Sequence record: PQ330092.1
DNA length: 64,000 nucleotides
Direction: 5' to 3' (one strand)
Positions within the stretch are counted from its first letter, which is position 1. Every line of letters starts with the position of its first letter. The notes beneath the pieces are model-generated. The model saw only the letters and a program-made list of their open reading frames with translations, was not told where the DNA came from and did no database searches. Below, piece after piece: positions 14,801 to 40,002 of this stretch. A program made the position numbers and the translations under genes.

Positions 14801-15309
14801 AATTGGTTAGTACTAACAAATGAACTGTTCATTACTAGAATGAAGTTTTCATACCAGTTAGCATCCATCGGGTCATTCCAACGAATGATTTTATCTTTTA
14901 ATGATTCATTAAAACTATTACGAACATCTTGGTTTGTTTTAATTTCGGTTAATTTAGCAACTGCACGACCTGGATATGAGCGGCGTGGTGAGTAAGAAAT
15001 CATTTTAGCTAGTTTTAGTACTGATGCACGACGAGTTGCAGTATCTAAAAAGTTTTCACGTGTGTTCAAATCCATACGAAATGCCAAGTTCTGACCTAGC
15101 ATAGAAATCGTATCTAAAATAAAAATAAACTGGTCGTTTTCGATCCAGTCGTTGAATGAGTCTGGGTAAGTTGCACGTAGATAATCAATCATACTCTGAC
15201 GGATAGTATCGAAATCATAAGCCGTTAGATTGATTTTATAAAAACTTTCATATACTTGAGTCCAATCCTCACCACTATATAAATTAGACTGTCTTTTTTG
15301 TTGTGACAT
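11848..15309 (-). CDS. gp6: Baseplate wedge subunit, T4 gp6-like (1153 aa)
   Basis: N-terminus LTAYDFDTIRQSMIDYL...ENFLDTATRRASVLKLAKMISYSP and SAETIEQIKARAP...QNRFVNGEDY motif typical of gp6/baseplate J. Confidence 0.85.
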   Translation of the reverse strand: MSQQKRQSNLYSGEDWTQVYESFYKINLTAYDFDTIRQSMIDYLRATYPDSFNDWIENDQFIFILDTISMLGQNLAFRMDLNTRENFLDTATRRASVLKLAKMISYSPRRSYPGRAVAKLTEIKTNQDVRNSFNESLKDKIIRWNDPMDANWYENFILVMNSSFVSTNQFGNPVKRIDVNGVSRQLYRMNTIPMTAPSIPFIATVNGESMTFEVVNPDITSVGVEERHPEPQEQKYIVYQNDGNGFSSPNTGFFVYFVQGTLTYQDYQYAIREENRIQDINVDNINETDVWVQEINEDGIVRTKWTKVPSMESIAYNTVNRQLKTIFAVTTRDKDQITIKYPDSRSGVVPRGTFRVWYRVSNGKTYNIKTSEIQNKSVKYTYRTKTQSSYESSTLDIRFSLQYESDRAQSAETIEQIKARAPQMYYTQNRFVNGEDYNIAPLSLGNTVLKSKAINRIYSGQSRFIDINDPTGKYQNTDVFSDDGALYQENTQFNRSLLLPTTKTNASIVIDNIQPLIGENAVIQRYQAFPSNTIGIEIQQAWTPVYNSNYTTNTYGRILGSSGTVYGSYQVGTLIKFSNSGTTIWASVVSVLDNGFYVLSTSVPSGMQAIEYILPYRTRFNSVEVQAISAMLDKKTDFVIVHDKETTSWVPIEVSTNDDTIVYNGNEVLIIINVKYTAETWEFDANGIEYIFVGGEKVRFYFVSSKKITDISTGTVQSDKIEILSSNTTSSSNSGLTSNIDFQIYDTIQQENGYLDGSRVIVTSRKVDSNGIPLEPNQFKEIVPTWTGTDALKYGGILVFQENSDFTISVLSLPNDTFTLLDSSWSYTMEQALAEPNAYKRTEFVRNNAIRSTTLSGLYSKGSGFLVGFNYDGKYYFIEQTVGNNNDRLGQLISNLTYSDDTGTVSPELAFYRAINNMGTNADENQKLDYYGYKDVTSQYTVKTNARTSIDFHWKHYAPDDNRIDPSRTNLIDMYVLTNSYKTEVDVWLKNNAVGSIPKPPTSVELKDMFKDVEQKIVISDSIIWHSAEYLPLFGNSAAEDYKADFKVVKLPNSTMSDDEIRQNVIALTNEYFNVDNWDFGESFYYTDLCTYIHSQLGRHISTIVIVAQNPNSKFGSLFEIPSRSDQIFLSTASVENVQIVNSLAKSNINIGS

Positions 15310-15313
15310 TATT

Positions 15314-16078
15314 TTAATCCTTTAATAATATGTTAAAATTATCATAAAAGTACTTTTTTAGTACTGAAATATAGTCTTCATTATACTTCAATCGAAGCAA
15401 ATTTATTCCATTCTCCGTACAGTACGTGTTTTTAATTTTATCATTGTGTTGAGTTTGTTTTAGTGATTTTGCACCACCCCAATGTTCTGAACATTGAAAA
15501 TGTTGTTCACCATCATATTCGATACACAAGTTTAAATCTTCAATATAAAAATCAAATGGCAATGTTAAAATATTCTTACAATTATCAAATCTCTTTTCTC
15601 TAACATATTTAAATGAAGATAATATAGTTTCTATATCTGATACTGCCTTGGATTGAGTACTATCTCTCATACATTTTTCACACCCGTATCTACTATTCAA
15701 GTGATTGTCAGGTCGCTGGTAGAATATACCATGTATGGGGCAACTTATTGATATATGTGTTTTATTATTAACATAATTAGCCATACTATAATCAAATTTA
15801 TTTTTAAATTTAAAATTGGCTTTTTTCTTGAAATTTAAAAAATTCTGTGGACTTTTTTGTCTATTTGTATTATATTCAATAGAACATTTCATGCATCCTT
15901 TACCACATGTATGGTCATTTGGTGTTTGTAGAAAAAATCCATGTTTTTCACAGCCAATCCATACTTTTGTTTTAGCATTATGATATTTAACCATACTATA
16001 GTCATATTGTATACCATGAACTTTTATTGAATTGGTTACAAATTTATATTTTGTCGATCTAGTGGTTGCATATTTCAT
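15314..16078 (-). CDS. Free-standing homing-endonuclease-like protein: two Cys/His repeats plus PD-(D/E)xK (Vsr/DUF559-like) nuclease
   Basis: Repeats YDYS..Y....V.I.C..HG.F.Q.P..H....GC..C; C-terminal LPFDFYIEDLNLCIEYDGEQH...DKIKNTYC..NGINLLRL; GGAG RBS. Confidence 0.75.
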   Translation of the reverse strand: MKYATTRSTKYKFVTNSIKVHGIQYDYSMVKYHNAKTKVWIGCEKHGFFLQTPNDHTCGKGCMKCSIEYNTNRQKSPQNFLNFKKKANFKFKNKFDYSMANYVNNKTHISISCPIHGIFYQRPDNHLNSRYGCEKCMRDSTQSKAVSDIETILSSFKYVREKRFDNCKNILTLPFDFYIEDLNLCIEYDGEQHFQCSEHWGGAKSLKQTQHNDKIKNTYCTENGINLLRLKYNEDYISVLKKYFYDNFNILLKD

Positions 16079-23198: not shown

Positions 23199-24038
23199 AT
23201 GACAAATAGACCAAAGCGTAAAAAGTATCTCAATAATGCTGATTTACTTCGTGAAATACAAAAAAGTAAAATTTCATATTGCTGGTTATTAGACAAATCA
23301 TATAGTATGTATGATTATATTGTTTTTCATGAGTCAGAAATTACTGCTGAGTTACTAGAAAAAGCTAAGGCAGCACGAATTAAACGACTGAACAATGAAA
23401 TGCTTGATAGTATTCGTGAAAAGGAAAATATGAGTGCTAAAAAAGCTAAAGAATATGCAGATGAACACAATTTAGTTATCACTGACGTTCCAATTGATGA
23501 AGTTGTTATTCGTGTTATTACAGATGAACATATTCCACCAGATACTAGAGTTAACTTTGAACCATTCAAGCATTATATTGTAGATAATGAAGGTATTCTC
23601 TATGAAGTTTGTCGTTCTCACTGGAAAGGCGACCTTGAAACTGGTGAATTCAGTACTGTTCATGGTAAAATTACAAATGAACTTGGGAAGATGTTCATTA
23701 AACTTGCAGAGGAAATCTCACACAAATCTAATTACAGAAACTATACATACTTAGATGAAATGATGGGTGATGCAAGAATACAATTAGTTAAAAACGCACT
23801 TCTCTTTAAAGAGAGCATTCTTTATAAAAAAGATAAACCAGCAGTTCAGCTAAATCCTTTCTCTTACTATACATCATTCGTAAACAATAGTTTTCGTTCT
23901 ATATTGAATAGTGAGAAAAATGTTCGAAATATACGTGATGATTTACTTGAAATGCATGGCTTTACGCCATCACATACACGTCAAATTGAAATTGAATTGA
24001 ACATGATTGAAAGGAAAAATGAAGATGGCTCTGTTTGA
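23199..24038 (+). CDS. gp55: Late-transcription sigma factor, gp55-like
   Basis: YLNNADLLREI...TNELGKMFIKLAE..S..SNYRNYTY.DEM.GDA...NPFSYYT; directly upstream of gp47/gp46. Confidence 0.8.
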   Translation: MTNRPKRKKYLNNADLLREIQKSKISYCWLLDKSYSMYDYIVFHESEITAELLEKAKAARIKRLNNEMLDSIREKENMSAKKAKEYADEHNLVITDVPIDEVVIRVITDEHIPPDTRVNFEPFKHYIVDNEGILYEVCRSHWKGDLETGEFSTVHGKITNELGKMFIKLAEEISHKSNYRNYTYLDEMMGDARIQLVKNALLFKESILYKKDKPAVQLNPFSYYTSFVNNSFRSILNSEKNVRNIRDDLLEMHGFTPSHTRQIEIELNMIERKNEDGSV

Positions 24039-25056
24039 TAAAGCAATTACATTCACTGATATTCATTTAGGTTTAAAGAATAACAGCAAGCAACACAATG
24101 AAGATTGTTTAAACTTCATTAAATTCATGATTGAGTTAGCTAAAAAAAATAATATCAAAGTTTGTGTTTTTATGGGAGATTATTTTCATAATAGAAGTAA
24201 TATCAATATCCAAACACTAAACTATGGTTTACAAATTCTTCAATTATTAAATGATAATTTTGAAAAAGTATATTTTTTAGTAGGCAACCATGATATGTAT
24301 CATAAAAACAAACGTGATATAACAAGTATCAATATGGCTCAAGTTTATGAAAATATAGAATTCATTAATGAAATTACAACATTTGATGATTGTACTTTCA
24401 TTCCATTTATGATTGAAGATGAATATAAGTTGTTACCTCAACTAAAAAGTAAGTATGTTTTTGGTCACTTAGAGTTACCAGGTTACTTGCTTAACAAGAT
24501 GGTAGAAATGCCTGATCATGGAAAAGAAACAGAAGGTTCTTTTGGTGGTTGTGAGTATGTTTTTAGTGGACATTTTCATAAAAGGCAGTCAAAAACAACT
24601 TCAAAAGGAACTCGTGTAGTTTATACTGGTAATTGTTTTCCACATAATTTTTCCGATACATGGGATGATGCAAGAGGTGTAATGATCCTTGAACATGGTA
24701 AAGAACCTATTTTCAAATCATGGGAACATGCACCAAAATATAGAACATTTACACTTTCAGAATTGTTAACTGATCCTGGTTATTATCTTCAAGATAATAC
24801 AATATCAAAAGTTCAAGTTGATATATCAATAACAACAGATGAGATTAGTTTTATTCGTGATACATTTACTAAACTTTACAACATTAGAGAGTTTAATGTT
24901 GTAACGAGCAAGCAAAGTATCGCAGAATTAATTGAAGATGGTGTTAGTTTTGAAAGTACTGAATCAGTTGATGAGATTGTGTTGCAGCAAATTATGGAAA
25001 TTGACTCACCCATGTTTGATAAAAATCTTCTAATCCAAATTTACAGATCGTTATAA
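24025..25056 (+). CDS. gp47: Mre11/SbcD-like recombination nuclease
   Basis: TDIH, GDYFH, GNHD, GHLE, SGHFH phosphoesterase motifs; AAGGA RBS fits ATG 24025. Confidence 0.9.
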   Translation: MALFDKAITFTDIHLGLKNNSKQHNEDCLNFIKFMIELAKKNNIKVCVFMGDYFHNRSNINIQTLNYGLQILQLLNDNFEKVYFLVGNHDMYHKNKRDITSINMAQVYENIEFINEITTFDDCTFIPFMIEDEYKLLPQLKSKYVFGHLELPGYLLNKMVEMPDHGKETEGSFGGCEYVFSGHFHKRQSKTTSKGTRVVYTGNCFPHNFSDTWDDARGVMILEHGKEPIFKSWEHAPKYRTFTLSELLTDPGYYLQDNTISKVQVDISITTDEISFIRDTFTKLYNIREFNVVTSKQSIAELIEDGVSFESTESVDEIVLQQIMEIDSPMFDKNLLIQIYRSL

Positions 25057-34965: not shown

Positions 34966-35589
34966 ATGAGTAGTATGATTCGTGAATGGTCTTCATTCAA
35001 TGATTCTAAAGTTGTTTTGGAACATCGTGATAATGGATTTGGTGGGCGTGACTGCTATCTTCGTGGTATTGCTATTCAAGCCGACCAACGAAATTTGAAC
35101 GAGAGAATTTACCCTTTATCTGAAATTACAAGGGCAGTAAATAACATGAACCAGCGTTTAGCTAAAGGTGAAAGCATTCTTGTTGAATGTGACCATCCAG
35201 AAACACTAACTATTAACCTAGACCGAGTAGCAGCAATGATTACTAAGGTTTGGATGGAAGGTGCTAATGGTATGGCAGAAATCAAACTACTTGATACTGC
35301 ACATGGTCAAAATATCCGTAAAATGCTAGAGGCTGGTGTAAAACTTGGTGTAAGTTCTCGCGGTTCCGGTAACGTTGATTATAATGGAATAGTTTCTGAT
35401 TTTGAAATTATCACTATTGATATTGTTGCTCAACCTAGTGCTCCAGAAGCATACCCAACAGCGGTATTTGAATCTCTGATGAGTAAGTACGGATCACCTT
35501 GTAATAGTTCTAAAAAAATCACTGAATCTAAAAAAGTAAATAATTTAGATTCTGAAATATACGATTTTTTCAAGAAATTAAAAGGTTAA
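34966..35589 (+). CDS. gp21: Prohead protease
   Basis: NLNERIYP, ECDHP, LGVSSRGSG, DIVAQPSAPEAYP motifs. Confidence 0.9.
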   Translation: MSSMIREWSSFNDSKVVLEHRDNGFGGRDCYLRGIAIQADQRNLNERIYPLSEITRAVNNMNQRLAKGESILVECDHPETLTINLDRVAAMITKVWMEGANGMAEIKLLDTAHGQNIRKMLEAGVKLGVSSRGSGNVDYNGIVSDFEIITIDIVAQPSAPEAYPTAVFESLMSKYGSPCNSSKKITESKKVNNLDSEIYDFFKKLKG

Positions 35590-36862: not shown

Positions 36863-38038
36863 ATGTCACAACTACTAAATGAATCCAAATGGGTAGCAGT
36901 AAAAGAGAAACTAGTTGAAGGTCTACAGGGTACTCGTAAGTCTGTAATGGAAACTGTTCTTGATAACCATCGTAAAGTTATGCTAACTGAATCCGCAACT
37001 TCTGGTGCAACTACCGCTGGTAACATCGCTACTCTAAACAAAGTGATTCTACCAATTATGCGTCGTGTAATGCCAACCGTTATTGCTAACGAAATCATCG
37101 GTGTTCAACCAATGACTGGTCCAGTTGGTCAGATCCACACCCTACGTGTGCAATATGCTGATAACGCACCTGGTGTTATCGCTGGTGAAGAAATGCTTTC
37201 TCCATACAAAATCGCTAAATCCTACTCTGGTGATCTAAATGCGGATAATAGCAACCCACAAGCTGCTCCTACTAGCCAACTAGAAGGTACTATGGGTCGT
37301 CGCGTTAACATCCGTATTCTACGTGAAACTGTTGAAGCGAAATCTCGTCGTCTATCTGCACGTTGGACTGTTGAATCTGCACAAGATGCTCAATCCCAAC
37401 ATGGTGTTGACGTTGAAGCAGAACTAATGGCTGCAATCGCTCAAGAAGTTACCGTAGAAATCGACCAAGAGCTACTAAGCCGTCTACGTGCACTACCTGG
37501 TGCTGCTGCTGTAACTTATGACCAATCTAAAGTTACTGGTGTTGCAACCTTCGTTGGTGATGAGCACGCTGCTCTAGCAACTCTAATTAACCGTCAAGCA
37601 AACGAAGTTGCTCGTCGTACTAAGCGTGGTGCTGCAAACTGGGCTGTTGTTTCCCCAACTGCACTAACCATTCTACAATCTGCTACTACTTCTAGCTTTG
37701 CACGTACCACTGAAGGTACTTTCGAAGCACCAACTAACGTTAAGTTTGTAGGTACTCTAAACAGCACTATGCGTATTTTTGTTGATACTTATGCAAGTGA
37801 TGCAGAAGATATTCTAATTGGTTATAAAGGTAATGCAGAAACTGATGCTGGTGTGTTCTATTGCCCATACATCCCACTAATGGCTTCCGGTACTGTAATG
37901 GACCCTAACACTGGGGAACTCGTTACAACTTTCTTAACCAGATACGGGTATGTTCAATTGACCGATAGCACCAGTTCACTAGGTAACGCTGCTGACTACT
38001 ACAGCAAAATCGCTATCAAAAACGTTACTTTCATGTAA
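36863..38038 (+). CDS. gp23: Major capsid protein
   Basis: RRVMPTVIANEIIGVQPMTGPVGQI.TLR, VEAKSRRLSARWT.E.AQD, EIDQE, FYCPYIPL. Confidence 0.96.
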   Translation: MSQLLNESKWVAVKEKLVEGLQGTRKSVMETVLDNHRKVMLTESATSGATTAGNIATLNKVILPIMRRVMPTVIANEIIGVQPMTGPVGQIHTLRVQYADNAPGVIAGEEMLSPYKIAKSYSGDLNADNSNPQAAPTSQLEGTMGRRVNIRILRETVEAKSRRLSARWTVESAQDAQSQHGVDVEAELMAAIAQEVTVEIDQELLSRLRALPGAAAVTYDQSKVTGVATFVGDEHAALATLINRQANEVARRTKRGAANWAVVSPTALTILQSATTSSFARTTEGTFEAPTNVKFVGTLNSTMRIFVDTYASDAEDILIGYKGNAETDAGVFYCPYIPLMASGTVMDPNTGELVTTFLTRYGYVQLTDSTSSLGNAADYYSKIAIKNVTFM

Positions 38039-38081
38039 TTGTAATAGATTTAAAAGATTTAATCAAGAAATTAAAAACAAT

Positions 38082-38110
38082 AGGGACTCTTCGGAGTCCC
38101 TTTTCTTTTT
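38082..38110 (+). terminator. Terminator after major capsid gene
   Basis: AGGGACTC-TTCG-GAGTCCCT plus TTTCTTTTT. Confidence 0.92.
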
Positions 38111-38121
38111 AATAAAAACCA

Positions 38122-38150
38122 TTGACACAATATTCTGGTATGTATATAAT
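38122..38150 (+). promoter_or_regulatory. Perfect sigma70 consensus (early) promoter
   Basis: TTGACA-N17-TATAAT with an A-rich upstream tract. Confidence 0.85.
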
Positions 38151-38182
38151 ACGCACATACACGCTATCAAAGAGACAAAAAT

Positions 38183-39280
38183 ATGCCAAACGTAAGTATC
38201 AACAAAGAAGAGTTTATTAACCAAATGACTGCTAAGTATGGAGAATTTGACTTCAGTACTTTAGTATTCAAGGCAAGTAAGACAACAGTGAAATGCAACA
38301 AGTGTGGAAAAGAAAACACCAAACCTGCACTTCGTCACATTGCATGTACATGTGCATCATGTTATTCAAACATGTCACAACGTTCAAATAACGACACATT
38401 CATCAGTACTGTAGAAACTAAATTTGGAAAAGATAAATTCAAATTTGATAAACTAAATTACACTAACGCTATAACAAAAGTAACACTGTTCTGCACTGAT
38501 AAAGAGCACAACAATTACTTTGAAATCACACCAAATAAATTTCTTTCTGGTAAAGGATGCCCCGTATGTAATAAAAATGAAGCATATAGTACTGAATCAT
38601 TCACTGCAAAAGTAAAAGAAAACTATGGTGATGCATTGGACTTGACGAATACTGTTTATGTCAATCAGAAAACTAAAGTAACGGTTCATTGCACAAAAGG
38701 ACATCATGACTGGACGGTAGATCCAAAAACTCTAATCGTCGGTAAAACTGGCTGTGGTACATGCTCTGGTAAAGGCGGTCGAAGTACGGAACGTTTCATT
38801 GAACTGGTGTCTCCTATCCATAACCATAAGTATGATTATAGCTTGGTTAATTATACTATAAGCGAGAATTATGTTGATATTGTATGTCCGATGCATGGTG
38901 TTTTCTCCCAACAACCAAAAGCACATATGGCTGGTAAAGGATGTCCATCATGTGGTGAATATGGATACCAACCATCAAAACCTGGATATTTCTATGTACA
39001 AAAACTAACTAACAATAACAAGACGGTGTACAAATATGGGATCACTGGTGATATGAAACGCCGTGTCAACGAACAAAGCCGCAATTCTGAGTTCGAGCAT
39101 GAAGTACTTATAGAACGCTACTTTGAAGATGGCAATCAACCATTACTGTTGGAAAAGTTCATAAAGAAATACATTGAAAGTGGTGTGGTAAGTACTGAAG
39201 AGTTACCGTCAGGATTTACTGAAACATTTGATGCTAAGTATCTTGAAAGTGTTTTAGAAATTGTAAATACTTTTAAGTAA
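38183..39280 (+). CDS. Free-standing homing-endonuclease-like protein: Cys/His repeats plus GIY-YIG-like domain
   Basis: Three repeats ending GKGCPVC/GKTGCGTC/GKGCPSC; C-terminal GYFYVQ...YKYGIT....RR...E. Confidence 0.78.
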   Translation: MPNVSINKEEFINQMTAKYGEFDFSTLVFKASKTTVKCNKCGKENTKPALRHIACTCASCYSNMSQRSNNDTFISTVETKFGKDKFKFDKLNYTNAITKVTLFCTDKEHNNYFEITPNKFLSGKGCPVCNKNEAYSTESFTAKVKENYGDALDLTNTVYVNQKTKVTVHCTKGHHDWTVDPKTLIVGKTGCGTCSGKGGRSTERFIELVSPIHNHKYDYSLVNYTISENYVDIVCPMHGVFSQQPKAHMAGKGCPSCGEYGYQPSKPGYFYVQKLTNNNKTVYKYGITGDMKRRVNEQSRNSEFEHEVLIERYFEDGNQPLLLEKFIKKYIESGVVSTEELPSGFTETFDAKYLESVLEIVNTFK

Positions 39281-39303
39281 ACAATCTAAAGGAGTTGACA
39301 CGG

Positions 39304-39654
39304 ATGTTAACTGTATACAAATTTAACAAAGAAGAGTACTTAAAGAGTCAGTACTCAAATATAGAAATAAATGTTCCTTATGGTACGTTAGTTGGATATG
39401 ATGAAGCCACTGAAACATTGTATTATAATGATGATAGATTGGATTATAGTTTAGATTCATTCATTGAAGATATACTTAATACACATACTGAAGATATGTT
39501 GTATGAAGAATACATAGACCATTATAGAGAACGTATGTCGGTGCTGCATTCTGATGCTCCTGTACTAAACATAGCACAAGAACCATCGGAATTTCAGCCA
39601 CATAATCCTTTTCAACGTTTAATTGATATTGGTTTAAAATTCACTATTAGTTGA
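39304..39654 (+). CDS. Hypothetical protein
   Basis: GGAG RBS fits ATG 39304; 116 aa. Confidence 0.6.
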   Translation: MLTVYKFNKEEYLKSQYSNIEINVPYGTLVGYDEATETLYYNDDRLDYSLDSFIEDILNTHTEDMLYEEYIDHYRERMSVLHSDAPVLNIAQEPSEFQPHNPFQRLIDIGLKFTIS

Positions 39655-39657
39655 TAG

Positions 39658-39686
39658 ATAAATATCTCCATATTAATGATGGAGAT
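39658..39686 (+). promoter_or_regulatory. Late promoter plus RBS-occluding hairpin
   Basis: ATAAATA 39658-39664; ATCTCCAT (39664-39671) pairs with ATGGAGAT (39679-39686), which contains the GGAG. Confidence 0.7.
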
Positions 39687-39693
39687 TGAATCT

Positions 39694-40002
39694 ATGTCAC
39701 AGATATGTTATGTTATAATAAACTCTGCATGGCCTGACTATGTTAAGATTGGTTTCACTTCTAAATCTGAAATGACAGAGCGTTTGAGAACGTATCAGAC
39801 AGCTACCCCGTTTCGTGATTTTGAAGTTTATCATGAAGTTCACTTTGAAGACGCACGTTTAGCTGAAAAAGAGATACATAAAAGGCTTAAACAAATGAAT
39901 GCAACTAGACAACCAAACACAGAGTGGTTTAAAATGTCTAAAAAGATAGCAGCAAACATCATTGATTCTGTGTGGGATGATATGGATAACGACTTGCTAT
40001 AG
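39694..40002 (+). CDS. T5orf172/MUG113-type GIY-YIG nuclease domain protein
   Basis: CYVI.....YVKIGFT....ERLRTYQT..P...AEKEIH..L....EWF. Confidence 0.8.
   Translation: MSQICYVIINSAWPDYVKIGFTSKSEMTERLRTYQTATPFRDFEVYHEVHFEDARLAEKEIHKRLKQMNATRQPNTEWFKMSKKIAANIIDSVWDDMDNDLL

What the first reader, a model, noticed from the sequence alone, without database searches (positions are those of the whole stretch)
37913..37978. Synonymously recoded 66-nt patch at the capsid gene 3' end beside a homing endonuclease
Seen: the capsid gene is strongly codon-biased (Gly GGT, Arg CGT/CGC, Thr ACT/ACC, Leu CTA 25 of 30). Within 37913-37978 it uses GGG twice, AGA, ACA, CTC, TTA and TTG, codons I found nowhere else in the gene, while the protein (GELVTTFLTRYGYVQL) looks normal. 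The bias resumes at 37979. A GIY-YIG-like endonuclease gene starts about 200 nt downstream. Established: free-standing T4 Seg/Mob endonucleases cut conserved neighbouring genes of endonuclease-lacking phages while their own allele is resistant; T4 segD also follows gene 23. Inference: this patch is the self-immune version of the cleavage site.
Basis: partly seen in the sequence, partly recalled or inferred. Interest (0 to 1): 0.7.

Follow-up and report, generated by a model that had tools for sequence, protein, structure and literature searches.

The report
Recoded capsid patch matched to nuclease
A 69-base stretch at the end of a giant E. coli phage's capsid gene is rewritten with silent changes, and the rewriting tracks the DNA-binding modules of the mobile nuclease gene next door, which marks it as the nuclease's likely target and immunity site, though cutting was not tested.

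Summary
The window is Escherichia phage JP4, an Asteriusvirus-type jumbo phage. In its capsid gene (36863-38038), GGGx2, CTC, ACA, TTA, AGA and TTG occur only in 37913-37960 (permutation p about 2e-4).

Across 20 E. coli and Salmonella relatives the protein there never changes, yet 37913-37981 is the peak of nucleotide diversity in the gene (pi 0.22, median 0.05). 28 phages carry 22 alleles. Synonymous difference is saturated (pS 0.70-0.75), but the 124 nt on its 3' side are identical.

The patch follows the inserted nuclease cassette (38111-39302), not the capsid backbone. The cassette has its own perfect sigma70 promoter and encodes four zinc-finger repeats plus a C-terminal T5orf172 domain. 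WPEC3 shares patch and nuclease with JP4 inside 6%-divergent flanks. E9.1 is almost identical to JP4 except for the patch and the zinc-finger region. Individual repeats co-vary with individual patch sub-blocks across intervening DNA, which argues against hitchhiking.

Best reading (0.6): the patch is the recognition and immunity region of a free-standing homing endonuclease. Cleavage, and which alleles are cut, are untested. Nuclease-free phages in the same clade are also recoded, so this is a many-allele contest, not "immune versus typical". It is a new member of a known kind.

The parts
36863..38038 (+). Major capsid protein gene (391 aa, T4 gp23 family). It is strongly codon-biased.
   Evidence: Pfam Gp23 E 1.3e-89. 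Annotated as major head protein in JP4, PQ330092.1. Codon table.
37913..37981 (+). The patch: 23 codons that are invariant as protein but hypervariable as DNA, with synonymous changes only. JP4 carries allele 'A'.
   Evidence: Rare-codon cluster p about 2e-4. Diversity peak 0.22. pS 0.70-0.75 against E9.1, slurp01 and PBECO4, compared with 0.004-0.037 upstream and 0 in the 18 codons downstream. 22 alleles in 28 phages.
37919..37930 (+). 5' sub-block of the patch. It co-varies with zinc-finger repeat 4 of the nuclease.
   Evidence: All four phages with repeat-4 cluster b (Turkey3, CRJP21, slurp01, WPEC5) have TTG GTC here. E9.1 differs from slurp01 in repeat 4 (46% identity) and, within the patch, only at 37919-37930.
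37931..37954 (+). Middle sub-block of the patch. It co-varies with zinc-finger repeat 3.
   Evidence: The phages with repeat-3 cluster b (EcMJ, SP27, BAU_ELP22) share TTT CTA, TAT GGC and GTA. Their repeats 1, 2 and 4 are JP4-like.
37958..37981 (+). 3' sub-block of the patch. It is recoded in carriers of the extra N-terminal repeat 1.
   Evidence: Codons 37967-37978 are recoded in 19 of 21 carriers of repeat 1 and in 1 of 6 carriers without it. Fisher p = 0.0014, not corrected for relatedness. Every nuclease-free phage examined has AGT ACT TCN TCT here, except IMG010 with a single wobble change.
38082..38110 (+). Capsid-gene intrinsic terminator (stem-loop plus T-run). Its end is the left junction of the inserted cassette.
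   Evidence: Terminator scan. Sequence conserved in all relatives up to the T-run.
38111..39302 (+). Inserted mobile cassette holding a promoter, the nuclease gene and the ribosome-binding site for the next gene. It is absent from PBECO4, SD-6_S16, SD-2_S15, fEgEco12 and Hallingskeid.
   Evidence: Empty site in SD-6_S16: the terminator T-run is followed directly by the ATG of the next gene. Annotated tables.
38122..38150 (+). Promoter inside the cassette: TTGACA, 17 nt, TATAAT.
   Evidence: 12 of 12 consensus match, the only perfect one in the 3.4 kb scanned.
38183..38965 (+). Nuclease gene, N-terminal part (residues 1-261): four tandem zinc-finger repeats of the CapR/DUF723/DUF4379 treble-clef type. 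Repeat 1 is 38183-38374, repeat 2 is 38375-38581, repeat 3 is 38582-38776 and repeat 4 is 38777-38965. This is the presumed DNA-reading array.
   Evidence: Pfam hits to DUF4379, CapR and DUF723. Invariant Cys pairs C104, C126/129, C170, C191/194, C235 and C254/257. AlphaFold model shows four repeated helix and beta-hairpin units, mean pLDDT 85.9.
38966..39280 (+). Nuclease gene, C-terminal part (residues 262-365 plus stop): the T5orf172 domain, of the GIY-YIG superfamily.
   Evidence: phrog_681 'endonuclease' E 2.6e-77 for the whole protein. Own T5orf172 hit 18.8 bits against a cut-off of 20. 20 of 40 homologues hit T5orf172 and MUG113, down to 1e-10. Motif GYFYV...YKYGITGD..RR..EQ with invariant Y271, G286, R293 and R294. 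dN/dS 0.04-0.09.
39303..39654 (+). Conserved downstream gene (phrog_15724, function unknown). It marks the right edge of the insertion site.
   Evidence: Present directly after the capsid terminator in nuclease-free phages. phrog hit E 8.7e-58.

Best explanation
The patch is the DNA segment read by the zinc-finger array of the free-standing homing-endonuclease-type gene inserted just downstream (38183-39280). JP4 carries the allele that goes with its own nuclease variant.

Proposed working, inferred by analogy with T4 Seg/Mob 'intronless homing':
1. In a mixed infection the nuclease, made from its own sigma70-type promoter, binds the 3' end of the capsid gene of a co-infecting relative that has a different patch allele, and cuts there or just 5' of it.
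2. The break is repaired from the nuclease-bearing genome. This copies the patch, terminator, promoter and nuclease gene into the recipient.
3. The resident genome escapes because its patch differs at wobble positions and at six-fold Leu, Arg and Ser codons. These are the only changes an invariant capsid peptide allows.

Several nuclease variants compete for the same insertion site. The patch has therefore been driven to synonymous saturation and many alleles, each inherited together with its own zinc-finger set.

Shown here: the anomaly, its hypervariability, the insertion polymorphism, the transfer of patch plus nuclease between backbones, the repeat-by-sub-block co-variation, and purifying selection on the nuclease.
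Inferred: binding, cutting, which alleles are cut, and homing itself.
For: 1. Mobile cassette. It lies exactly between the capsid terminator and the next gene's start. It is absent in 5 relatives and is replaced by at least 5 other nuclease-like ORFs in others. It carries its own 12/12 promoter.

2. Nuclease family. phrog_681 E 2.6e-77. Zinc-finger repeats plus T5orf172/MUG113 across homologues. This is the class described as phage homing endonucleases, 31% of whose neighbourhoods contain a capsid gene (PMC10448857). All 9 metagenomic homologues looked up also sit directly after a 391-aa Gp23 gene. dN/dS is 0.04-0.16, so the gene is functional and not decaying.

3. Divergence confined to the patch. 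pS is 0.70-0.75 in the patch, 0.004-0.037 upstream, and 0 of 10.3 synonymous sites in the 18 codons after it. The non-coding spacer up to the terminator is also essentially identical.

4. The patch follows the nuclease, not the backbone. WPEC3 has 66 differences from JP4 up to 37837, then none to the end of the gene, and its nuclease protein is 100% identical (only isolated silent differences up to about 39150), with divergent flanks on both sides. E9.1 has 1 difference in 1107 nt of capsid gene but 16 of 69 in the patch. The swapped block ends at about 38950, so it covers the zinc-finger region but not the catalytic domain. The 12 carriers of the JP4-type nuclease are exactly the 12 records with the highest patch identity. 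Partial Mantel test of patch distance on zinc-finger distance, given backbone distance: r = 0.55, with 0 of 5000 permutations reaching it. Patch against backbone gives rho 0.08.

5. Non-contiguous co-variation. Repeat 4 goes with 37919-37930, repeat 3 with 37931-37954, and presence of repeat 1 with recoding of 37967-37978. Other-type DNA lies in between.

6. Recoding occurs where nucleases circulate. Atypical codons in the patch number 4-13 (median 9) in 34 nuclease-bearing phages and 1-4 in 12 distant nuclease-free ones. The rest of the gene predicts about 1.

7. Precedent. Free-standing T4 endonucleases cut neighbouring conserved genes hundreds of bp from their own gene (PMC2988022). For MobE, sparing of the carrier genome has been proposed to rest on nucleotide polymorphisms in the site (PMC2790892).

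8. A second case in the same window. A zinc-finger nuclease ORF at 15314-16078 is absent from E9.1 and abuts a cluster of mostly silent changes in the first codons of the baseplate wedge gene.
Against: - No cleavage, binding or homing data exist for this enzyme. No target site could be found in the literature library for any zinc-finger T5orf172 nuclease.
- The pairing is not one-to-one. fEgEco12 has no nuclease but carries the slurp01-type patch. SHEFM2K has a 332-aa nuclease but the same patch as nuclease-free PBECO4. EC.P1 and UE-S1 share a patch but have unrelated nucleases. SP27 has the JP4-type nuclease with an ancestral-like 3' sub-block.
- Nuclease-free phages within the clade are also recoded.
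- The repeat-by-sub-block co-variation rests on about three independent events, and the statistics are not corrected for shared ancestry.
- JP4's own T5orf172 hit is just below Pfam's cut-off.
- The fold match of the C-terminal domain is weak. The top hit is 1zg2, which I recall (untested here) to be a GIY-YIG-superfamily protein; E 0.65, TM 0.43-0.47.
Confidence: 0.6

Rival explanations
1. Passive hitchhiking. The nuclease does home, but its real target is elsewhere, for example the empty intergenic junction. The patch is then only flanking DNA from diverged donor phages, dragged in by co-conversion, with no role in recognition or immunity.
For: The patch is physically close to the cassette, 130 nt from its left junction. 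It always lies at the left end of the exchanged tracts. Co-conversion of flanks is normal for free-standing endonucleases (PMC2988022). The nuclease genes themselves are far more diverged (pS 0.27-0.6) than the backbones, so the donors were divergent.
Against: - A diverged donor flank should be diverged all the way to the cassette. Instead the 57 coding and about 70 non-coding bases between patch and cassette are identical among the JP4, slurp01 and PBECO4 types, while the patch is saturated.
- Co-variation of repeat 4 with the sub-block farthest from the cassette, across about 900 nt of other-type sequence, cannot arise from a single tract.
- Among JP4-type carriers the patch is more conserved than the nuclease gene's own silent sites. 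BF17 shows 2 of 17 synonymous sites changed in the patch against pS 0.45 in the gene.
Confidence: 0.15
2. Cis-acting binding site. The zinc-finger protein binds its own patch allele to do something other than homing, such as regulating late or capsid expression like the CapR repressor, or marking a nick or recombination site. On this view protein and site co-evolve to keep binding, not to avoid it.
For: CapR, a domesticated relative of these DNA-binding domains, binds the ICP1 capsid operon promoter as a repressor (PMC8096241). I-TevI doubles as an autorepressor (same source). Co-variation as such fits maintained binding as well as avoided binding.
Against: The site lies inside the 3' end of the coding region, not at a promoter. 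A maintained binding site gives no reason for saturation-level diversification or 22 alleles. The nuclease domain is kept under strong purifying selection with its motif residues invariant. The cassette is dispensable, being absent in five relatives.
Confidence: 0.12
3. Escape from another sequence-specific agent. The patch is a favoured target of host CRISPR spacers, a restriction system, or a nuclease encoded elsewhere, and its link to the adjacent cassette is incidental.
For: Silent-site diversification in an invariant peptide is also what defence escape would leave. Nuclease-free phages in the clade are recoded too.
Against: This does not explain why patch alleles track the zinc-finger repeats of the neighbouring gene independently of the backbone. 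It also does not explain why a second nuclease cassette in the window shows the same kind of adjacent cluster. No such agent was identified.
Confidence: 0.06
4. Translational or RNA-level feature. The rare codons would be a programmed ribosome pause for capsid folding, or part of an mRNA structure or small RNA site. Alternatively the cluster is chance.
For: Rare-codon clusters near domain ends are known in other proteins (general knowledge). The cluster is real.
Against: A functional pause or structure should be conserved, but the positions and identities of the odd codons differ in nearly every relative, and distant relatives use common codons. The RNA fold is no better than shuffles, z = +0.58. 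No Rfam family reached its threshold. Chance is excluded at p about 2e-4, and by the diversity peak.
Confidence: 0.02

Closest known systems
Free-standing homing endonucleases of T-even phages ('intronless homing' and marker exclusion: SegF/gene 56, SegG/gene 32, SegE/uvsW, MobE/nrdB)
   Same: The gene is intergenic and present or absent between conserved genes. The target is inferred to lie in the neighbouring essential gene, some distance from the insertion site. Flanking markers are co-inherited. Protection of the carrier genome is proposed to rest on nucleotide polymorphisms in the site (PMC2988022; PMC2790892).
   Different: The protein architecture differs: an N-terminal array of four zinc-finger repeats and a C-terminal T5orf172 domain, whereas Seg proteins have the GIY-YIG domain at the N-terminus (general knowledge). 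It has a perfect sigma70-type promoter of its own, whereas the endonuclease-specific promoters mapped in T4 are middle or late. Many diverged nuclease variants compete at one site. The presumed target is saturated with silent changes in 22 alleles, not a simple two-state polymorphism. Nothing has been tested biochemically.
T5orf172 homing endonucleases with CapR/DUF723/DUF4397 zinc-finger DNA-binding repeats (ICP1 and other phages; Barth, Dunham & Seed 2023, PMC10448857; Netter et al. 2021, PMC8096241)
   Same: Same domain set and order, and the same repetitive, shuffled DNA-binding modules. Same habit of sitting beside capsid and other essential genes and at the boundaries of recombination tracts. 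Here the catalytic domain is 98-100% identical between JP4 and the slurp01/E9.1 type, while repeats 2 and 3 are only 42-48% identical.
   Different: Those papers do not mention Asteriusvirus phages, synonymous recoding, or any mapped target for the zinc-finger class ('synonymous' 0 hits, '121Q', 'PBECO4' and 'jumbo' 0 hits). This locus offers a candidate target and a candidate repeat-to-DNA correspondence.
T4 segD
   Same: A GIY-YIG-superfamily endonuclease gene placed right after the major capsid gene, between genes 23 and 24 (PMC2988022).
   Different: segD is transcribed in the opposite direction to genes 23 and 24, has no identified promoter, and its target was listed as unknown. The JP4 gene is co-oriented, has its own promoter and a different domain order. 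No sequence comparison with SegD was made here.

Membership tests
Free-standing homing endonuclease gene (intronless homing) | Intergenic gene that is present or absent among otherwise collinear relatives | tested here: met
   PBECO4, SD-6_S16, SD-2_S15, fEgEco12 and Hallingskeid lack it. In SD-6_S16 the junctions are exact: terminator T-run followed directly by the next gene's ATG.
Free-standing homing endonuclease gene (intronless homing) | Flanking markers co-inherited with the gene, with mosaic boundaries at the element | tested here: met
   JP4 and WPEC3 share about 37838-39150 inside flanks that are 6% divergent. JP4 and E9.1 differ only in 37924 to about 38950.
Free-standing homing endonuclease gene (intronless homing) | Site-specific cleavage of the allele that lacks the gene, and resistance of the carrier's own allele | not testable with these tools
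   This needs enzyme assays and mixed infections. The only support is indirect co-variation.
T5orf172 homing endonucleases with zinc-finger DNA-binding repeats | C-terminal T5orf172/MUG113 domain | tested here: met
   JP4's own hit is E 0.0023 at 18.8 bits, just under the 20-bit cut-off. 20 of 40 aligned homologues hit T5orf172 and MUG113, down to 1e-10 and 2.7e-11. phrog_681 E 2.6e-77.
T5orf172 homing endonucleases with zinc-finger DNA-binding repeats | N-terminal repeated CapR/DUF723/DUF4379-type zinc fingers with conserved Cys/His pairs | tested here: met
   DUF4379, CapR and DUF723 hits. Invariant cysteines in each of repeats 2-4. Four repeated units in the AlphaFold model.
T5orf172 homing endonucleases with zinc-finger DNA-binding repeats | Encoded next to an essential gene such as the capsid gene | tested here: met
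   It lies directly 3' of the Gp23 gene in JP4 and in every homologue locus examined.
GIY-YIG nuclease superfamily | GIY...YIG sequence motif followed by a conserved Arg and an acidic residue | tested here: met
   GYFYV-(10)-YKYGITGD-(2)-RR-(2)-EQ, with Y271, G286, R293 and R294 invariant or nearly so, and E297 and E324 at least 90% conserved. Assigning catalytic roles to these residues is inference.
GIY-YIG nuclease superfamily | The three-stranded sheet plus helices fold of the catalytic domain | tested here: inconclusive
   The domain model has pLDDT 87.4 and pTM 0.81, with element order strand-strand-helix-strand-helix. The best PDB match is 1zg2 (UPF0213 protein BH0048), which I recall from general knowledge to be a GIY-YIG-superfamily protein; that was not tested here. 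The match is weak: E 0.65, TM 0.43-0.47. The whole-protein search was uninformative.
T4 Seg-type GIY-YIG endonucleases (e.g. SegD) | N-terminal GIY-YIG domain followed by a C-terminal DNA-binding region | tested here: not met
   The domain order here is the reverse: zinc fingers at residues 1-261 and the nuclease-type domain at 262-365. Sequence similarity to SegD was not tested.

The most novel reading that the evidence does not exclude
The locus may be a naturally modular, collinear protein-DNA recognition system. On this reading each roughly 65-residue zinc-finger repeat reads its own block of about 12-24 bp of the capsid gene. Repeats 1/2 would read 37958-37981, repeat 3 would read 37931-37954 and repeat 4 would read 37919-37930. 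The catalytic domain would then sit over the invariant DNA 5' of 37913. Competing nuclease variants at one insertion site would form a many-allele 'incompatibility' system, in which repeats and silent-site blocks are swapped together and kept diverse by frequency-dependent selection. If true, this would give the first target and a readable recognition rule for the widespread T5orf172 zinc-finger nucleases.
Probability: 0.25. Interest if true: 0.8.

Novelty: new member of a known kind. Interest (0 to 1): 0.58.

Why it matters
Zinc-finger T5orf172 nucleases are widespread in phages. tblastn found matches in 949 phage records. They have been proposed to shape phage mosaicism, yet I found no mapped target for one.

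This locus supplies a precise, testable candidate target of 69 bp. It also supplies natural allele series paired with natural repeat variants, and near-isogenic phage pairs (JP4 and E9.1; JP4 and CRJP21) that differ almost only in patch and nuclease. That makes homing, immunity and the specificity of individual repeats directly testable.

It also shows that a selfish nuclease can drive silent sites of a highly expressed, codon-optimised capsid gene to saturation. This matters when capsid genes are used as phylogenetic markers or for codon-usage inference.

Tried and rejected
- PDB sequence search with the whole nuclease: only chance hits, E above 0.5.
- NCBIfam: nothing meaningful.
- Foldseek with the full four-repeat model: uninformative, because the domains are loosely arranged (pTM 0.36). 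Repeating it with the C-terminal domain alone gave only a weak top hit.
- Exact-match scan of JGI metagenome contigs for the JP4-type 3' sub-block: 0 hits. The IMG/VR scan returned only a 348,532-bp contig, the same length as the phage 121Q genome and probably that genome. No extra independent carriers came from these.
- IMG/VR relatives of the capsid protein: mostly too distant. Only about 12 were close enough to read the patch. These served as the nuclease-free, codon-typical outgroup.
- RNA structure and Rfam: negative.
- A single diagnostic base separating all JP4-type carriers from all nuclease-free alleles: none exists. The nearest is the Arg codon at 37940-37942. It is AGR in almost all carriers of nucleases at least 55% identical to JP4's, and CGY in nearly all others. 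The exceptions are EC.P1, mgP0006, mgP0008 and fEgEco12.
- Literature searches for a prior description of this patch or of nucleases in Asteriusvirus capsid regions: none found in the held library.
Full report
**Identity and context.** The window is 100% identical to Escherichia phage JP4 (PQ330092.1), a roughly 370-kb Asteriusvirus-type jumbo phage of the PBECO4/121Q group. The ORF 36863-38038 is the major capsid protein (Pfam Gp23, E 1.3e-89). It follows the prohead protease (34966-35589) and a scaffold-like gene.

- GGG (twice), CTC, ACA, TTA, AGA and TTG occur nowhere in the gene except 37913-37960.
- I shuffled synonymous codons among positions of the same amino acid. A 16-codon window with at least 7 of the 19 rare codons appeared in 22 of 100,000 shuffles.
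- The peptide is as quoted. Preferred codons resume at 37979, and the next ORF starts 205 nt downstream.

**The downstream gene.** ORF 38183-39280 (365 aa) matches phrog_681 'endonuclease' at E 2.6e-77.
- Pfam gives sub-threshold or borderline hits to DUF4379, CapR and DUF723, which are treble-clef zinc fingers, and to T5orf172 at residues 268-309.
- Of 40 aligned homologues, 33 hit DUF4379, 18 hit DUF723, 11 hit CapR, and 20 hit T5orf172 and MUG113, down to 1e-10.
- The alignment has invariant cysteine pairs in each repeat. It also has an invariant GYFYV...YKYGITGD..RR..EQ motif.
- An AlphaFold model (pLDDT 85.9) shows four repeated helix-plus-hairpin units and a compact C-terminal domain.
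- Modelled alone, the C-terminal domain has pLDDT 87.4 and pTM 0.81. Its best PDB neighbour is 1zg2, which I recall (from general knowledge, not tested here) to belong to the GIY-YIG superfamily. The match is weak: E 0.65, TM 0.43-0.47.
- This is the class described by Netter et al. 2021 and by Barth, Dunham & Seed 2023: T5orf172 homing endonucleases with repeated CapR-like zinc-finger DNA-binding domains, often next to capsid genes. [quoted passage not shown]
- Among JP4-type variants dN/dS is 0.04-0.16 in both parts, so the gene is maintained.

**It is a mobile cassette.**
- In PBECO4, SD-6_S16, SD-2_S15, fEgEco12 and Hallingskeid the capsid terminator is followed directly by the homologue of 39303-39654. 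In SD-6_S16 the T-run abuts the ATG.
- In JP4 the insert (about 38111-39302) brings a perfect TTGACA-17-TATAAT promoter at 38122-38150.
- Other relatives carry different ORFs at the same spot:
  - a 306-307-aa version lacking the first repeat (slurp01, WPEC5, E9.1);
  - 300-309-aa versions (EC.P1, Kae01, Munch);
  - a 364-aa version only 63% identical (EJP2);
  - 332-aa ORFs (SHEFM2K, JNE01, TH47);
  - a 406-aa ORF (Turkey5);
  - unrelated 498-552-aa ORFs (UE-S1, ph0011).
- All nine metagenomic homologues looked up also lie directly after a 391-aa Gp23 gene.

**The patch is a hotspot of silent change.**
- The C-terminal 45 residues are identical in all E. coli and Salmonella relatives examined.
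- In 66-nt windows over those 20 genes, 37913-37981 is the top diversity peak: 0.223, against a mean of 0.058 and a median of 0.050.
- 28 phages carry 22 different patch sequences.
- JP4 against E9.1, slurp01 or PBECO4 gives pS 0.70-0.75 in the patch, which is saturated. The 1050 nt upstream give 0.004-0.037, and the 18 codons downstream give 0 of 10.3 synonymous sites.
- The non-coding spacer up to the terminator is also essentially identical.
- Serine codons switch between TCN and AGY at three positions, and Leu and Arg switch codon families. All of this happens without any amino-acid change.
- Over about 49 kb, JP4 and E9.1 differ at 180 positions. Sixteen of these lie in 58 nt of the patch.

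**The patch goes with the nuclease, not with the capsid backbone.** Two capsid backbones about 6% apart circulate.
- WPEC3 is on the other backbone. It differs from JP4 at 66 sites up to 37837 and then at none to the end of the gene. Its nuclease protein is 100% identical, with only isolated silent differences up to about 39150, after which divergence resumes.
- E9.1 and CRJP21 are on JP4's backbone, with 1 and 0 differences in 1050 nt. They differ at 16 and 7 patch positions and carry a different or diverged nuclease.
- In JP4 against E9.1 the replaced block runs from 37924 to about 38950. It covers the patch, the spacer and the zinc-finger region. The T5orf172 domain is identical.
- The 12 GenBank phages with a JP4-type nuclease (at least 87% identity) are exactly the 12 with the highest identity over 37870-38040.
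- For 27 carriers of this nuclease family, patch distance correlates with zinc-finger distance (rho 0.55) but not with backbone distance (rho 0.08). The partial Mantel r is 0.55, and 0 of 5000 permutations reached it.

**Co-variation is modular and non-contiguous**.
- Repeat 4 of CRJP21 and Turkey3 is 100% identical to that of slurp01 and only 81% identical to JP4's. These phages have slurp01's TTG GTC at 37919-37924 and TAT GGT at 37943-37948. Their repeats 1-2 and the patch's 3' sub-block are JP4-like.
- E9.1 and slurp01 share repeats 2-3, the catalytic domain and most of the patch. They differ in repeat 4 (46% identity) and at 37919-37930.
- EcMJ, SP27 and BAU_ELP22 share a distinct repeat 3 (72-74% identical to JP4's). 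They also share a distinct middle sub-block: TTT CTA, TAT GGC and GTA.
- Recoding of 37967-37978 is seen in 19 of 21 carriers that have repeat 1 and in 1 of 6 that lack it (Fisher p = 0.0014, uncorrected). Nuclease-free phages have AGT ACT TCN TCT there, apart from one wobble change in IMG010.
- The co-varying pieces are separated by hundreds of bases of other-type sequence. Simple linkage therefore does not explain them, but joint selection of repeat and DNA block does.
- The pattern suggests an antiparallel collinear map: N-terminal repeats on the 3' sub-block, repeat 4 on the 5' sub-block, and the catalytic domain over the invariant DNA 5' of 37913. That is also where the left ends of the exchanged tracts fall.
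- This rests on about three independent events and is a hypothesis.

**Where recoding is found.** I counted patch codons that are rare (10% or less) in the rest of the same gene.
- 34 phages with a nuclease at the site have 4-13 such codons (median 9).
- 12 more distant nuclease-free relatives have 1-4.
- The rest-of-gene rate predicts about 1.
- PBECO4, SD-6_S16 and fEgEco12 lack a nuclease but are nested in the nuclease-rich clade, and they have 7-9.
- The un-recoded state therefore exists, but outside the clade in which these nucleases circulate. Inside it, even empty-site phages are recoded. They may have lost a cassette, or they may carry escape alleles.

**Exceptions**.
- fEgEco12 has no nuclease but carries slurp01's patch.
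- SHEFM2K has a 332-aa nuclease but PBECO4's patch.
- EC.P1 and UE-S1 share a patch but have unrelated nucleases.
- SP27 has a JP4-type nuclease with an ancestral-like 3' sub-block.
- The relation is statistical, not one-to-one.

**Interpretation.** The known framework is intronless homing.
- Free-standing phage endonucleases cut a neighbouring conserved gene at a distance from their own gene.
- They are copied in by repair together with flanking markers.
- For MobE, sparing of the carrier genome has been proposed to rest on site polymorphisms (PMC2988022; PMC2790892).

Everything measurable here fits that framework, with the patch as the recognition and immunity region. Three rivals remain and are weighed in their own sections: passive hitchhiking, a cis regulatory binding site, and escape from another agent.
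- Hitchhiking is disfavoured by the invariant 124 nt between patch and cassette and by the non-contiguous co-variation.
- A translational-pause or RNA-structure role is contradicted by the variability. It is also contradicted by a fold no better than shuffles (z = +0.58) and by the absence of any Rfam match.

Still unproven are binding, cutting, the position of the cut, and whether the resident allele is the spared one.

**Novelty.** The held literature describes this nuclease class and its capsid neighbourhood. It does not describe Asteriusvirus phages, a target site, or silent-site recoding. I rate it a new member of a known kind, with an unusually clean natural data set and a testable modular-recognition hypothesis.

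**A second case in the same window.** A 254-aa ORF at 15314-16078 on the minus strand has a DUF723 zinc finger and a weak DUF2726-like C-terminus. It is absent from E9.1. It abuts a cluster of changes in the first 12 codons of the baseplate wedge gene: four silent and one Ser/Ala. This suggests the phenomenon is general in these genomes.

Noticed in passing
window 15314-16078 (- strand) and 15275-15309: A second free-standing nuclease-like ORF of 254 aa, with two DUF723-type zinc-finger repeats and a weak DUF2726-like C-terminus. It is present in JP4 but absent from E9.1, where only about 34 nt lie between the aligned blocks at that site. It abuts the start of the 1153-aa baseplate wedge gene, whose first 12 codons carry four silent changes and one Ser/Ala change between the two phages.
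   Followed up: partly
window 39676-40002 (+): A 108-aa protein consisting of a T5orf172/MUG113 domain alone (Pfam E 3.7e-13), with no DNA-binding region. It is conserved two genes downstream of the capsid gene in every relative examined, including those without the nuclease cassette. Its role is unknown; it could be a remnant, a partner or an inhibitor of the nucleases.
   Followed up: no
window 38966-39277; loci L083, L092: Domain shuffling between nuclease types. The C-terminal T5orf172 domain of JP4 is 98-100% identical to that of the three-repeat slurp01/E9.1 type, while zinc-finger repeats 2 and 3 are only 42-48% identical. The catalytic module is therefore shared and the reading modules are exchanged.
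   Followed up: partly
site equivalent to window 38111-39302 in loci L095, L098, L099, L101, L102, L108: The same intergenic site holds several other cassettes in relatives. These are 332-aa ORFs (SHEFM2K, JNE01, TH47), a 406-aa ORF (Turkey5), and 498-552-aa ORFs with no BLAST similarity to the JP4 nuclease (UE-S1, ph0011). The site is a hotspot for different mobile genes.
   Followed up: partly
loci L120 3640-4263 and L121 3105-3728: In two metagenomic relatives a further 207-aa ORF with no Pfam hit sits between the nuclease gene and the conserved downstream gene.
   Followed up: no
window 24681-24798 and 24978-25011: Another dense cluster of JP4/E9.1 differences (about 15 in 120 nt, then 5 in 35 nt) lies inside ORF 24007-25056. 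By coordinate offset this ORF corresponds to the gene annotated in E9.1 as the SbcD-like nuclease subunit. The cause was not examined.
   Followed up: no
window 37754-37850: A second, lower diversity peak in the capsid gene (pi about 0.13). It includes amino-acid changes and does not travel with the nuclease type, since JP4 and WPEC3 differ there. It may be a variable protein segment.
   Followed up: partly
loci L096 (SD-2_S15) and L100 (CMSTMSU): The capsid gene is split by frameshifts in these two GenBank records, while close relatives have it intact. The annotation around them is also fragmented, so these are probably sequencing or assembly errors. Both were excluded from the codon analyses.
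   Followed up: no
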